From: Saccostrea echinata
Lineage: Eukaryota
DNA length: 64,000 bases
Direction of reading: 5' to 3'
NCBI RefSeq assembly: GCF_033153115.1
Contig: NW_026889761.1
Location: 12,462,001 to 12,526,000, forward strand
Below, one piece after another: positions 16,701-20,847 of the stretch. The translations under genes were made by a program, and so were the position numbers. Position 1 is the stretch's first letter. Every line of letters starts with the position of its first letter. Below the pieces are notes generated by a model that did no database searches, was not told the origin of the DNA, and saw nothing but the letters and a program-made list of their open reading frames with translations.

Positions 16701-19700
16701 TCCTAATAGCGGAAGGATATATGTGGGAGTTGGAGAGAAGAGGATATCTGACCGCTGGAGGATTTATTCCAGAAGTAGTTCTTGACAACCCTGAAATAGT
16801 GCGTGCCCTTCACCAAGAATTCGTCCACGCTGGCACTGATGTTATAGAAGCATTTACGGTAAGTACGTAATGTAAATATTACTAATAAAACTGTGCAGAG
16901 AGTCATTTATAGTATTTCCCCTCGTTGATCATTACCGTTCCTCTTGCGCAACATCTTTTCCAGATTTTATCTATCTAAAGTTTCATTTGTTATTTTCAAT
17001 TTATCGGAAAGGATATCGAAATAGTGAAAGCTTTGTTAGAGGTTCTCCCCCCCCCCCCCCCCAAATCATATTGCATTTGTAATTAAATCTTTTACAAGTC
17101 AGTCAAAACAAAATGCCATCAACAAATTTGCAGGGTGTTTCATATAAAGTACTTTGTTTTAATATTTTGTAGTACTATGGACATCGTGAAAAACTGCGTC
17201 TGATTGGTCGAGAAGATGACCTCGAGAAGTTAAACAGAGAGGCACTGCAGATAGCAAAGGAAGTAGCGTCAGACAATGGTAAACTACTGGCTGGAGGTAT
17301 CTGTAACACTGGGGTGTACAATCCAGAGGACGAGGCCACATTTGCCACTGTCACCTCAATGTTCAAAGTAAGATTCCATTGGTAGGTTATGTTTAAAGTA
17401 AGATTTCATTGGTAGGTTATGTTCAAAGTAAGAATCCATTGGTAGTGTAGGTTATGTTCAAAGTAAGAATCCATTGGTAGGTTAGGTTCAAAGTAAAATA
17501 TCATTGGTAGTTTCTGTTCAAAGTACATGTAAGATTTCATTAATAGGTAATATTCAAAGTAAGATTCCATTGGTAAGTTATGTTCAAAGTAAGATTCCAT
17601 TGGTAGGTTATGTTCAAAGTAAAATATCATCGGTAGGTTATGTTCAAAGTATGTGAAATCTTCGAGTTTCATTTTTATTAAAGAAGCCTTTGTCTACGAT
17701 ATCAAAAGTCTATACTCTAGATATCCTAGTCTATACTTTATCGCGGGGAAAAATGTACAATGAGATGTTGAAAAATCATACATGTTTTGATTTTGGCAAT
17801 ACATGTATTTTATAATTTTCAAATTTTCTAAGAGTTTTTCTAAGTTTTTTTTAGAATCAATTTTTTTAAACATCACTTTTTAAATACTGGTATGTTGTTG
17901 CATAGTACTGCCAGAGTTTCTCCTTCACTATCGCCATTATTATCGCGAGGAGTAAAGAAAAAGGCTTGATAAATAATTAAAACAAATGTTAAATGAGAAT
18001 TTATTTTGTCCAGGAGCAAATAGAGTGGGCAGTAGAGTATGGTGTAGACTTTATAATAGGTGAAACCTTCAATGATTTGGGGGAAGCCATGCTTGCTTTA
18101 AAGGCCATTCAGAACTATGGGAAAGGTGAGGGTTTTACCATGTAATATTGATCTTAACAAAGTATTGGTTAGATAATTCATTTACATTATATAATCAGGA
18201 ATAAAAACTGAATGCAAGTTATGAACGAAGTCTAAATGTTTCCTATAATGCACCTTTACTTCCTTTGAAGAATCTTTATGTACATGTAAAAAGTCTAGTA
18301 GGAAAGGGTTAATGATTATATATTTTTTTGTTTTATAAGTATCTTTCCAAACATTCCACGGTTCACTTCAAGATATAACTGATATTATATGTAGGAGTTC
18401 CTGCGGTTATTACACTGACTGCGTACTTCCCCGATACCACGACAGATGACGTTCCTATTCCGGAGGCGTGCCGCCGTCTGGAGGAAGCGGGGGCCGCGGT
18501 GGTGGGTCTGAACTGTGGGAGGGGCCCTAGCACCATGATACCACTCGTCAAGGAGATCAAAAAAGTTTGCAAGGTAATAGGAAATAAATTCATAGCTGTA
18601 AAGAGTTTCCTTGCATTCTGAAGTTCAATTAGTGAATATAAATGACTTGAAAACAGAAATTAAATAGTTTCATAGCTGTAAATAGTTTTTTACGTTCTGA
18701 AGTTCAATTATTGAATATAAACCATTATGGATGCCTTCCTCTGTAAAGGAGATTGCTGTTTATTTTACAAAGTGATAGTGACATGGGTTACTTGGATATA
18801 TTTCATTTCATGTCAAGATTCACTAACCAAATGTCAAATGACATATCATAAATGCGATAAACAGTTTCATCTCAGATAGTGAGGAACAAAGCCAGTACAC
18901 GTGAAACAAACCGTCTAATGCAATTCTAGTCACCAGTCACTCAGGTGACCTATTGCTATCTGGGGGGTTTTCGCCGTCATGTATAGTCTGTCGTACGTTA
19001 ATATTTGATGATTTTCAGCTTCTTCTCTGGAACCACTACAGTTATATCAAATAATTTTGATATGTTGCTTAAATCGAATAAAAGAATAATACTGGGTTGT
19101 TGATGAATATAACCAGACTAATCATTATGTTCCCTAATCGTCCTATTCCTCTGTTTTAACAACATATCTTCATCTAAATGTATTTTGTTTTATTGTATAA
19201 TTATCAAATTGCCATTCCATAGATCCTTTACAGGATTGTATTATACACAGGTGACCGTTAAGGCCCTCGGGCCTCTTGTCTTTCCAGGGACCTGTAGCTA
19301 TGTTACCTGTGACTTTCCGCTGTAGAGATAACTGTCGCACATTCCAGTCCCTCAAAGATCCAGAAACTGGTATATTTATCCTCATAATGTGTTCGTATAT
19401 AAGTTAAATGAGCTTAGCCAGCTTCAATAATGGTTAAATATTATTTTGAGAGAGAGGGAGGGAGAGACAGACAGAAAGAGAGAGTCCGATTGCTTTGGTG
19501 TGATATTATGTAAGTTTGTCTTTCGCGGAAGTAAATTTATCGTTACATTTCGCACGTGTGAGTCACTGATATACAAATGTGGCGTTCAGACAGGTTCAAT
19601 CGCCAGTGGCCAGATAGCTCAGTTGGTAGAGCACCTGACTGATAATTCAGGGGGCCTGAGTTCGAATCCCGGTCTGGTCCGTCACATTTTTCTCCTCTCC

Positions 19701-20847
19701 TGTTACATTTGGTGCCTGCCATGCCCTGGAAGTGACAGTTGAAAGACCTGCCAGGGAAGACCCTGGGTTGGTGTCTTCGGGGGCCGAAGACCTTAAGAGA
19801 GGGAGGAATGTGGCGGTCAGACAGGTTTGATCGCCGATGGTGAGATACTCAGTTGGTAGAGCAACTGACTGGAGATTCAGGGGGCCCGGGTTCGAATCCC
19901 GGTCTGGTCCGTCGCATTTTTCTCCTCTCCTGTTACATTTGGTGCCGAGCCATGCCCTGGAAGTGAAAGGTGAAAGATCTGCAAAGGAAGAGCTTGGGTT
20001 GGTGTCTTCGGGGGCCGAAAAACCTTTAAGGAGGGAGGATTGTGGCGGTCAGACAGGTTCGATCTCCGGTGGCCAGATAGCTCAGTTGGTAGAACACCTG
20101 ACTGGAGATTCAGAGGCCCGGGTTCGAATCCCGGTCTGGTTCGTAGCATTTATCTCCTCTCCTGTTACACAAACATATAAAGTTCAAAAGGTGATATACA
20201 GAATCTCAATCCCAGATTTCCTACTCCCAAATGCTGGTTTTTGACAACTGTCAAATTTTTAAAATTATTCTTTCTGATTATATGTAAACAGTTCATATCA
20301 ACAGACTTTTCGTCTGCGGAGACTGTTAGTTTGAAAATATAACCGATTTCAAACCAATGTATGCCAACTTGCAAAATGAATTGTCAAGCTATTGGCATTC
20401 TGTTCTCCTATAAAATGTGACATCAGTTGGATCTTAAATGTTTTACAGAACAGACAAAACAAATCACTTCAAGAAATATTGATGGAATGTTAAAATGTTA
20501 AAATACTAGTAAATTAAAAATGTCAGTAGTATATACTTGTTTATGATTCTATTCCAGGAAAACCATTATATCCATTTGAACTTGAGGCAGCCAGATGCAG
20601 TAGATCAGACATAAGGTCCTGGGCGGAGGAGGCCAAAGAAGCTGGGGTGGAGTACGTAGGTCTCTGTTGTGGGAACGCCTCGTTTTACTTCCGGGAACTC
20701 GCAGAGGCTTATGGGAGAAAACCACCAACTTCTAAATATGCCCCTAATTTGAATCTTAGCCATATCTTCGGTAAGCCAAGTAAGGATGATAGGTTCAAAC
20801 GTTCCACGAAAATCAGGGAATTCATGATTGGTAAGGAGAACGCTTGA
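13768..20847 (+). CDS. BHMT: Betaine-homocysteine S-methyltransferase-like protein, copy 1 (7 coding exons, 353 aa)
   Basis: Exons 13768-13780, 16668-16858, 17173-17367, 18014-18125, 18395-18573, 19288-19369 and 20558-20847, all GT-AG, total 1062 nt in one open frame. Protein: [31 protein letters not shown]...PEVV...[22 protein letters not shown]...GETF...[10 protein letters not shown]...YVGLCCGN. The Zn-ligand motifs GLNC and GLCCG are intact. Confidence 0.92.
14484..14596. repeat. Near-perfect ~113-bp palindrome (collapsed MITE-like hairpin) in BHMT copy 1 intron 1
   Basis: TGTCCTCTACAAA...AATTTAAATTTG.ATATGACAA / TTGTCATAT.CAAATTTAAATT...TTTGTAGAGGACA. Confidence 0.8.
16213..16448 (-). 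mobile_element. 3'-end fragment of the Penelope-like RT family
   Basis: Matches 48474-48705 (GGGATCAGGTGCCATGGAGGAGTGAG...CCCGCCGTGTGCTCC). Confidence 0.85.
17359..17652. repeat. 30-bp minisatellite (9 units plus a partial tenth) built from the exon 3 / intron 3 junction
   Basis: Unit ATGTTCAAA|GTAAGATTCCATTGGTAGGTT; the first unit overlaps the end of exon 3. Confidence 0.93.
18926..19280 (+). mobile_element. Short degenerate Helentron-type (pearl/HINE-like) non-autonomous element in BHMT copy 1 intron 5
   Basis: 5' GTCACC...CAGGTGACC-TATTGCTAT; 3' CAGGTGACC followed by the hairpin AGGCCC-TC-GGGCCT and CTTGT. Confidence 0.7.
19608..19680 (+). pseudogene. tRNA-like sequence inside TRIM LTR 1
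   Basis: Acceptor stem GGCCAGA/TCTGGTC, D arm GCTC-AGTTGGTA-GAGC, T loop TTCGAAT, A and B boxes. The anticodon arm is non-canonical. Confidence 0.8.
19839..19910 (+). pseudogene. tRNA-like sequence inside TRIM LTR 2
   Basis: Same cloverleaf with a degenerate 5' acceptor strand and A box; intact T arm CCGGG-TTCGAAT-CCCGG. Confidence 0.75.
20071..20142 (+). pseudogene. tRNA-like sequence inside TRIM LTR 3
   Basis: GGCCAGATAGCTCAGTTGGTAGAACACCTGACTGGAGATTCAGAGGCCCGGGTTCGAATCCCGGTCTGGTTC. Confidence 0.8.

What the first reader, a model, noticed from the sequence alone, without database searches (positions are those of the whole stretch)
19578..20169. Tandem miniature LTR retroelement whose LTRs each carry a tRNA-like gene
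Seen: what looks like three tRNA genes is a single insertion bounded by a 4-bp TSD (CAAA). It has three TGT...ACA LTRs of ~130 bp, each with a 72-73-nt cloverleaf carrying Pol III A/B boxes. Two ~102-bp internal segments start with a PBS-like TGGTGCC(G) and end in a polypurine tract. There is no coding capacity. Known: Cassandra TRIMs carry 5S rRNA sequence in their LTRs and form the same tandem arrays. I also recall a tRNA-bearing TRIM group called Helenus with 4-bp TSDs in animals, so this may be a member of that group rather than wholly new. Inference: a SINE/LTR hybrid, transcribed by Pol III and mobilised by a Gypsy-type partner (4-bp TSD), that would inflate tRNA gene counts in annotations.
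Basis: partly seen in the sequence, partly recalled or inferred. Interest (0 to 1): 0.85.

Follow-up and report, generated by a model that had tools for sequence, protein, structure and literature searches.

The report
Known tRNA-bearing miniature retrotransposon, tandem copy

Summary
Window 19578-20169 reads LTR(130)-internal(101)-LTR(129)-internal(103)-LTR(129). All LTRs run TGT...ACA, and a CAAA target duplication flanks the whole insertion. Each LTR holds a tRNA-like sequence that Rfam scores above its tRNA threshold. Each internal part starts with a tRNA-His-type primer site and ends in a polypurine tract.

This is Helenus (Kojima 2024, PMC10886601). Young copies in this genome are about 97% identical, by eye, to the published Helenus-1_SaGl of Saccostrea glomerata.

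- **Family:** it is dispersed, with 1782 first-look candidates. Twenty of 25 independent copies have perfect 4-bp duplications. Most copies are plain LTR-internal-LTR.
- **Window copy:** it is old (LTRs 88-90% alike) and its cloverleaves no longer fold. It lies, in sense orientation, in the last intron of an expressed BHMT-like gene.
- **Tandem form:** its three LTRs and two internal parts share no private mutations, so the double form dates from the insertion or just after.
- **Priming:** other copies carry 18 or about 38 nt copied from host tRNA-His, which are fossils of tRNA-His-primed reverse transcription.

No autonomous Gypsy partner was found, and Pol III transcription was not tested. 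First readers of this scan flagged the same element type elsewhere in this genome.

The parts
19574..19577 (+). Left target-site duplication, CAAA
   Evidence: It matches 20170-20173. Twenty of 25 independent family copies have a perfect 4-bp TSD.
19578..19707 (+). LTR1 (130 bp, TGTGG...GTTACA). The tRNA-like part is 19608-19680, the A box 19615-19626, the mutated B box 19659-19669 and a T5 run 19687-19691.
   Evidence: Rfam tRNA 55.8 bits. ARAGORN reports a 4-base anticodon.
19708..19808 (+). Internal part 1 (101 bp). It reads TT, then a decayed tRNA-His primer-binding site from 19710 (TGGTGCC, with one G lost), and ends in the polypurine tract 19795-19808.
   Evidence: It aligns with 30 other internal parts of the family.
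19809..19937 (+). LTR2 (129 bp), shared by the two units. The tRNA-like part is 19839-19910, with a broken acceptor stem and a 1-nt deletion in the A box. A T5 run lies at 19917-19921.
   Evidence: Rfam tRNA 33.2 bits.
19938..20040 (+). Internal part 2 (103 bp). The primer-binding site starts at 19940 (TGGTGCCGAG, one substitution). The polypurine tract is 20028-20040.
20041..20169 (+). LTR3 (129 bp). The tRNA-like part is 20071-20142. The T run is mutated to TTTAT.
   Evidence: Rfam tRNA 44.4 bits. Called by ARAGORN.
20170..20173 (+). Right target-site duplication, CAAA
19369..20556 (+). Host intron (1188 nt, GT..AG) that contains the whole element in sense orientation. It is the last intron of a BHMT-like gene.
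   Evidence: A splice joint 19368->20557 appears in contigs of three runs. The last exon, 20557-20847, matches betaine-homocysteine methyltransferase structures at E 6e-7.

Best explanation
The feature is one insertion of a Helenus-type TRIM: a non-coding, non-autonomous LTR retrotransposon whose LTRs carry a tRNA-derived sequence. It belongs to the lineage published as Helenus-1_SaGl / Helenus-2C_CGi from oysters. It is in the tandem form LTR-internal-LTR-internal-LTR.

Shown here:
- The anatomy and the 4-bp TSD.
- A dispersed family of hundreds or more copies, mostly plain LTR-internal-LTR.
- Recent activity elsewhere in the genome: some copies have identical LTRs.
- Priming by host tRNA-His. 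Family copies carry a perfect 18-nt copy of the tRNA-His 3' end, and aberrant copies carry about 38 nt of it.
- The window copy is an old, decayed member of an older subfamily. It lies in the last intron of an expressed BHMT-like gene.
- Its three LTRs and two internal parts have only private mutations, so the tandem form arose at insertion or very soon after.

Inferred, not shown:
- The A and B boxes drive Pol III transcription from within the 5' LTR. The RNA would have to read through the T5 run of that LTR and end in the 3' LTR.
- A Gypsy-type element supplies reverse transcriptase and integrase.

The tRNA-like part has an 8-nt anticodon loop in every copy examined, so it is a promoter relic and not a working tRNA.
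For: Structure and TSD.

tRNA likeness. A young copy folds as a perfect cloverleaf with an 8-nt anticodon loop.

Family: 1782 first-look candidates, and the listed hits span the full 362 bp at 87-91% identity. A 23-mer of the LTR occurs 249 times at up to 1 mismatch, against 0 for the control. Twenty-one of 26 elements have two LTRs and five have three. Twenty of 25 independent copies have perfect 4-bp TSDs, all different. Intra-element LTR identity is 88-100%.

Published match: PMC10886601 defines Helenus and lists bivalve families with 4-bp TSDs and tRNA-His priming. Its DataS1 sequences of Helenus-1_SaGl differ from L009's LTR by 3 substitutions and 1 indel in 130. They differ from L007's first internal part by 4 of 103 (compared by eye).

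tRNA-His priming: the host tRNA-His 3' end was read from real genes. The 18-mer TGGTGCCGTGACCAGGAT replaces the imperfect PBS in many copies, with several different junctions. L048 and L031 carry the tRNA-His complement as far as position 38.

Timing of the tandem: against young copies, the window's LTRs have 9, 6 and 6 private changes, 4 shared by all three and none shared by exactly two. The internal parts have 6 and 12 private changes and none shared.

Intron context.
Against: - No autonomous partner was found. None of 33 loci with an LTR end plus a tRNA-His PBS has a gag-pol-sized frame downstream, and two 10-kb extensions held no Gypsy domains.
- No data here bear on Pol III transcription. 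The T5 run about 8 nt after the tRNA-like part is present in nearly all LTRs. It should terminate Pol III inside the 5' LTR, which is a problem for the simple Pol III template model.
- The comparison with the published consensus was made by eye from the supplement text, not by an aligner.
Confidence: 0.93

Rival explanations
1. The tandem form of the window copy arose long after insertion. Unequal crossing-over between the 5' and 3' LTRs of a plain two-LTR element would have produced it, the usual explanation for TRIM arrays.
For: This DNA-level route exists in the family. L022 (two LTRs) and L027 (three LTRs) share the same TSD and 98-99% identical near flanks. In L018 and L027 the middle LTR carries mutations otherwise private to the 3' LTR.
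Against: In the window copy no mutation is shared by exactly two LTRs, and none of the 18 changes in the internal parts is shared by both. A late duplication would leave shared changes.

Tandems L007 and L048 hold internal parts of the same sub-lineage that differ just in how the PBS was copied. That points to events within a retrotransposition cycle.
Confidence: 0.22
2. It is a small cluster of three real, tandemly duplicated tRNA genes with their spacers.
For: Rfam and ARAGORN call them tRNAs, and A and B boxes are present.
Against: Every copy examined has an 8-nt anticodon loop and no assignable anticodon. The window copies no longer fold as cloverleaves. The unit has TG..CA ends, a PBS, a PPT and a TSD, and it occurs at many unrelated sites, each with a different TSD.
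Confidence: 0.01
3. It is a tRNA-derived SINE, or a SINE dimer, mobilised by a LINE, or simply a local 232-bp minisatellite.
For: It has a tRNA-derived head with an internal Pol III promoter and is short. TRF reports a 232-bp period.
Against: It has no A-rich or LINE-like tail. The TSD is a fixed 4 bp rather than variable in length. It has terminal direct repeats with TG..CA, a PBS complementary to tRNA-His and a PPT. The canonical family form is LTR-internal-LTR, not a head-to-tail array. tRNA-His primer fossils show retrovirus-like reverse transcription.
Confidence: 0.02

Closest known systems
Helenus-1_SaGl (Saccostrea glomerata) and Helenus-2C_CGi (Crassostrea gigas), from Kojima 2024, Biology 13:119, PMC10886601
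   Same: The architecture and sizes match: LTR 129/128 bp, internal 103/101 bp, total 361/357 bp, 4-bp TSD. Both have a tRNA-like sequence with A and B boxes in the LTR, a TGGTGCCGTG primer site of tRNA-His type and a GGAGGGAGGAA polypurine tract. Young copies here are about 97% (LTR) and 96% (internal) identical to Helenus-1_SaGl by eye.
   Different: Fixed small differences in all copies examined (for example GGAAGTGAC here against ggaattgac) suggest a sister species rather than S. glomerata itself. The window copy is an older subfamily, with CCGTCRCA as in Helenus-2C_CGi where young copies have CCGCTGCA. It is also a three-LTR tandem, a form the paper mentions only for zebrafish LTR-11_DR.
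Cassandra TRIMs of plants (5S rRNA-derived LTRs; long tandem arrays, PMC7215508)
   Same: It is a TRIM with a Pol III-type small-RNA gene relic in each LTR, and it forms LTR-internal-LTR-internal-LTR arrays.
   Different: The relic here is tRNA-like, not 5S, and Rfam finds only tRNA. This is an animal host with a 4-bp TSD.
biv-TRIM of bivalves (Satovic et al. 2019, PMC6934838)
   Same: It is a bivalve TRIM with canonical, solo and tandem forms.
   Different: biv-TRIM has no recognisable PBS and carries a conserved TGATCCCAAAGGAC in its inner domain. This element has a clear tRNA-His PBS and lacks that motif. The passages read mention tRNA similarity only in the inner domain, none in the terminal repeats.
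tRNA-derived SINEs (SINE2)
   Same: Both have a tRNA-derived head with A and B boxes, are non-coding and short, and get miscalled as tRNA genes.
   Different: SINEs have no LTRs, PBS or PPT, and they use LINE machinery. This element replicates like an LTR retroelement.

Membership tests
Helenus (TRIM with tRNA-derived LTRs; Kojima 2024) | TRIM anatomy: two or more short direct LTRs around a short non-coding internal part that starts with a PBS and ends with a PPT | tested here: met
   The 592 bp hold no gag or pol.
Helenus (TRIM with tRNA-derived LTRs; Kojima 2024) | tRNA-like sequence with conserved A and B boxes inside each LTR | tested here: met
   Rfam tRNA at 55.8, 33.2 and 44.4 bits. ARAGORN. 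A young copy folds as a cloverleaf.
Helenus (TRIM with tRNA-derived LTRs; Kojima 2024) | 4-bp target-site duplication in animal members | tested here: met
   CAAA on both sides. Twenty of 25 independent copies are perfect.
Helenus (TRIM with tRNA-derived LTRs; Kojima 2024) | Sequence similarity to a published family (Helenus-1_SaGl) | tested here: met
   I compared the supplement text with copies L009 and L007 by eye. There are 4 differences in 130 for the LTR and 4 in 103 for the internal part.
Helenus (TRIM with tRNA-derived LTRs; Kojima 2024) | PBS complementary to the 3' end of a host tRNA (His in this bivalve lineage) | tested here: met
   The host tRNA-His 3' end comes. The regular PBS matches 10 nt. 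Many copies carry a perfect 18-nt match, and two fossils carry about 38 nt.
Helenus (TRIM with tRNA-derived LTRs; Kojima 2024) | Transcription by RNA polymerase III from the LTR | not testable with these tools
   The paper proposes this too and had not shown it. The runs laid are assembled contigs and cannot show starts or ends.
Helenus (TRIM with tRNA-derived LTRs; Kojima 2024) | Mobilisation by an autonomous Gypsy element with the same primer type | tested here: inconclusive
   No gag-pol lies next to any of the 33 His-PBS loci fetched.
Cassandra | 5S rRNA-derived sequence in the LTR | tested here: not met
   The Rfam scan of 19000-20800 at E<=1 lists tRNA and no 5S rRNA.
tRNA-derived SINE | LINE-type or A-rich 3' tail and no terminal direct repeats | tested here: not met
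   The element ends in GTTACA directly before the TSD, and it has LTRs, a PBS and a PPT.
Functional tRNA gene | 7-nt anticodon loop with an assignable anticodon and an intact cloverleaf | tested here: not met
   The loop is 8 nt in all 57 LTRs aligned. The window copies do not fold as cloverleaves.

The most novel reading that the evidence does not exclude
The family keeps a readable record of its own replication.

(a) Many copies have had their imperfect 23-nt primer site replaced by the exact 18 nt copied from host tRNA-His. This is the classic plus-strand stop at position 58.

(b) In the two aberrant copies read here, plus-strand synthesis read on to tRNA position 38 and stopped before G37. 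Three further CCA-bearing matches also span about 38 nt of the tRNA-His complement, but their ends could not be read. The stop would imply an m1G37-type block in oyster tRNA-His.

(c) Some three-LTR tandems, probably including the window copy, are born during or within about one cell cycle of retrotransposition rather than by late unequal crossing-over. Their two internal parts differ just in how the primer site was copied, or share no later mutations. Possible routes are cDNA recombination, template switching, or sister exchange before the PBS heteroduplex is resolved.
Probability: 0.45. Interest if true: 0.35.

Novelty: already known. Interest (0 to 1): 0.17.

Why it matters
Its value is mainly practical.

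- **tRNA annotation:** these elements are called as tRNA genes by standard tools, and there are hundreds or more in this genome. tRNA annotation of oyster genomes therefore needs to mask Helenus. This was already stated by Kojima 2024.
- **This copy:** it shows that a 592-bp Helenus dimer can sit in sense orientation in a 1188-nt intron of an expressed BHMT-like gene and the intron is still spliced out.
- **Family-level side results:** the tRNA-His primer fossils and the two routes to tandem forms give modest support to the retrovirus-like replication that the paper inferred from the PBS and PPT alone. They could also guide a search for the still unknown helper element.

Tried and rejected
1. 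**Helper Gypsy.** A 16-mer built on the human tRNA-His 3' end found nothing, because the oyster tRNA-His differs. I fetched 33 loci with ACA-NN-TGGTGCCGTGAC. All are Helenus-like or other short elements without gag-pol-sized frames. Two candidates extended to 10 kb (L068, L069) had no LTR pair and no retroelement domains.
2. **Host gene.** Pfam on the last exon was blank. The PDB sequence search gave BHMT.
3. **Species name.** Run and organism names are coded. The name Saccostrea echinata comes only from an earlier unchecked note.
4. **RNA evidence for Pol III transcripts.** All the runs were assembled contigs. Coverage of the LTRs comes from many diverged copies and says nothing about starts, ends or the polymerase.
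5. **L022 and L027 as simple haplotigs.** Rejected. They share only about 630 and 340 bp of flank, so they are copies of a larger duplicated unit.
6. **Aligner comparison with the published sequences.** The comparison was made by eye.
7. **Consensus.** No family consensus or repaired copy was built. Real copies served as references.
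Full report
**1. What is in the window**

- CAAA lies at 19574-19577.
- LTR1 is 19578-19707, internal part 1 is 19708-19808 and LTR2 is 19809-19937.
- Internal part 2 is 19938-20040 and LTR3 is 20041-20169.
- CAAA lies again at 20170-20173.

Each LTR begins TGTGG and ends GTTACA. Each internal part begins TT followed by TGGTGCC. 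Each ends in a purine run that abuts the next TGTGG. Tandem Repeats Finder sees a 232-bp period, 2.6 copies and 88% matches. The LTRs are 88-90% identical to each other and the internal parts 86.5%.

The Rfam tRNA model scores all three LTRs above its gathering score: 55.8, 33.2 and 44.4 bits. ARAGORN calls two of them, each with a four-base 'anticodon'. A-box and B-box consensus sequences are present. The 592 bp cannot encode gag or pol. The window holds no other copy.

**2. It is one member of a dispersed family**

The first LTR-internal-LTR unit has 1782 first-look candidates in the window's own 923-Mb genome. The listed hits span its full length at 87-91% identity on many contigs. A 23-mer from the LTR occurs 249 times at up to one mismatch, with none for the reversed control.

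In the 30 loci fetched I delimited 26 elements. Twenty-one are plain LTR-internal-LTR of 357-369 bp and five have three LTRs. Of 25 independent insertion sites, 20 have a perfect 4-bp duplication, all different and mostly A+T-rich. Chance gives 1 in 256 per site.

LTRs of one element are 88-100% identical, and two elements (L009, L015) have identical LTRs. The family was therefore active recently, while the window copy is among the oldest seen. The window copy shares ACAGG, CCGTCRCA and CCTGTTACA with L014, where the young copies have ACGGG, CCGCTGCA and CCCGTTACA. That marks an older subfamily.

**3. It is a known family**

Kojima 2024 (PMC10886601) named TRIMs with tRNA-derived LTRs 'Helenus'.
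- The paper reports 51 families in pteriomorph bivalves, with 4-bp TSDs in animals.
- It names Gypsy-39_CGi as a tRNA-His-primed Gypsy and notes tandem arrays for one fish family.
- It makes the point that such LTRs are miscalled as tRNA genes.

Its Table S1 lists Helenus-1_SaGl of Saccostrea glomerata with LTR 129, internal 103, total 361 and TSD 4. Its DataS1 gives the sequences.

I compared these by eye with copies of this genome. The SaGl LTR differs from the L009 LTR by three substitutions and one T in the T run, which is 126 of 130. The SaGl internal part differs from L007's first internal part at 4 of 103 positions. Helenus-2C_CGi of Crassostrea gigas is also close, and it shares the CCGTCA state with the window copy.

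Some small differences from the SaGl sequence are fixed in all copies read here, for example GGAAGTGAC in 31 of 31 internal parts. The genome is therefore probably a sister species.

**4. The tRNA-like part is a promoter relic, not a tRNA**

A young copy (L009:1531-1603) folds by minimum free energy into a textbook cloverleaf, but with an 8-nt anticodon loop. The same loop, CTGGAGAT, is present in nearly all of the 57 LTRs aligned, and all have 8 nt. None of the three window copies folds as a cloverleaf any longer. LTR2 has a broken acceptor stem and a deletion in the A box.

A T5 run follows the tRNA-like part by about 8 nt in almost all LTRs. In the window it survives in LTR1 and LTR2 only. 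If Pol III drives the element, as Kojima proposes by analogy with Cassandra, the template RNA must read through this run in the 5' LTR and stop at it in the 3' LTR. This is inference only, and nothing here tests it. The published SaGl sequence has T4 at that place, and Helenus-2C_CGi has no run of four.

**5. Reverse transcription primed by host tRNA-His is supported by fossils**

Real tRNA-His genes of this genome (L033, L034) end in GGTTCGAATCCTGGTCACGGCA.

The family's usual primer site matches the tRNA only over TGGTGCCGTG and then diverges. Many copies instead carry the perfect 18-mer TGGTGCCGTGACCAGGAT, joined to the rest of the internal part at several different points. It occurs 92 times in the genome. 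Eighteen nucleotides is what plus-strand strong-stop DNA copies from a tRNA primer in retroviruses, which is established knowledge. These copies therefore look like primer sites rewritten from the primer itself.

Two aberrant copies go further. Both carry the complement of tRNA-His through the T arm and variable loop up to position 38, and both stop just before G37.
- L048:1786-1826, of this family.
- L031:1497-1538, of another Helenus family.

A 38-nt pattern finds five such CCA-bearing pieces. The seven intact genes listed lack the CCA. A modified G37 that blocks the enzyme would explain the common stop, but that is inference.

**6. How the tandem form arose**

Two routes are visible in the family.

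The first is late and at DNA level. L022 (two LTRs) and L027 (three LTRs) have the same TSD and 98-99% identical near flanks. In L018 and L027 the middle LTR carries changes otherwise private to the 3' LTR.

The second is early.
- In L007 the two internal parts are of one sub-lineage but differ in the primer site: one is the usual form and the other the 18-nt tRNA copy.
- In L048 the internal parts of the three-LTR stretch also differ there: one is the read-through fossil and the other the 18-nt copy.
- L020 joins internal parts of different sub-lineages.

For the window copy I compared each part with young copies. The LTRs have 9, 6 and 6 private changes, four shared by all three (the subfamily states) and none shared by exactly two. 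The internal parts have 6 and 12 private changes and none shared. A duplication made well after insertion would have left shared changes. The dimer therefore dates from the insertion or shortly after. The data cannot separate integration of a dimeric cDNA, template switching and an immediate sister-chromatid exchange.

**7. Context**

Contigs from three public runs join 19368 to 20557 across a GT..AG interval on the + strand. The element thus fills half of a 1188-nt intron, in sense orientation.

The downstream exon (20557-20847, 96 codons and a stop) matches the C-terminal part of betaine-homocysteine S-methyltransferase structures at E 6e-7. Pfam alone gave nothing.

One contig of another sample runs without mismatch from the exon into LTR1 (19341-19641). 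Another spans the LTR3 end into the flank (20123-20273). The insertion is therefore present in other samples of the same coded organism.

**8. What could not be settled**

- Pol III transcription, the R boundaries and current mobility are untested.
- Copy numbers are lower bounds.
- The solo-LTR share was not measured.

**9. Verdict**

It is an old tandem copy of a published oyster TRIM family, so its novelty is low. First readers of this scan flagged the same element type at other places in this genome (s1-817838, s1-812203, s1-810184). The side observations on primer fossils and early-born dimers are the only parts that go beyond the paper, and they concern other loci.

No family consensus or mended copy was built. 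The alignment tool printed its own consensus lines, and I did not use them as sequences.

Noticed in passing
L048:1545-2232 (G000:C18:2643818-2644505): This is a Helenus array of internal-LTR-internal-LTR-internal-LTR. The middle internal part (1786-1875) is replaced at its 5' end by about 38 nt of tRNA-His complement that stops just before G37. It is a fossil of plus-strand read-through of the primer.
   Followed up: partly
L031:1380-1620 (G000:C10, about 1364924-1365164): A copy of a different Helenus family shows an LTR end, then GAT, then the tRNA-His complement up to position 38, and then a jump straight into the D-arm region of a truncated LTR. The stop point is the same as in L048.
   Followed up: partly
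G000:C40:4700957, C56:3894292, C1:11085151: Three more tRNA-His-complement pieces carry a CCA-derived TGG or TTG prefix. They may be further primer read-through fossils. Their flanks could not be fetched.
   Followed up: no
G000:C54:50019690-50040343 and C54:67253142-67258196: These are clusters of intact tRNA-His(GTG) genes without an encoded CCA. They were the source of the primer sequence used above.
   Followed up: partly
G000:C46:6914815, 6916023, 6917231: The Helenus LTR 23-mer recurs three times at exactly 1208-bp spacing. This suggests an LTR caught inside a larger tandem repeat.
   Followed up: no
window 21295-22000: Just downstream of the BHMT-like gene lie a 37-bp repeat (2.1 copies), a 19-bp repeat and a 147-bp tandem repeat with at least 4.2 copies at 91% matches. 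The scan ended at 22000, so the array may go on.
   Followed up: no
L016/L017 (C30 vs C27) and L018/L023 (C75 vs C77): These pairs of loci on different contigs are 99.2-99.7% identical, over the full 3.4 kb for the first pair and over about 2.1 kb of the overlap for the second. The same Helenus insertion is included. They are probably retained haplotigs or recent segmental duplicates in the assembly.
   Followed up: partly
window 19244-19317: Just upstream of the splice donor, this stretch has very high summed contig depth in all four runs, including the distant organism C. The loose ends at 19236 and 19279 suggest that another interspersed repeat overlaps it.
   Followed up: no
run X10 (organism C) on window 19578-20169: A DNA run of a third coded organism holds none of the unique flanks. 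It has tens of thousands of summed depth on the LTR parts, so related Helenus LTRs are very abundant in that organism too.
   Followed up: no
window 19448-19486: A purine-rich, low-complexity GA/GGGA/GACA run lies in the same intron, about 90 bp upstream of the insertion.
   Followed up: no
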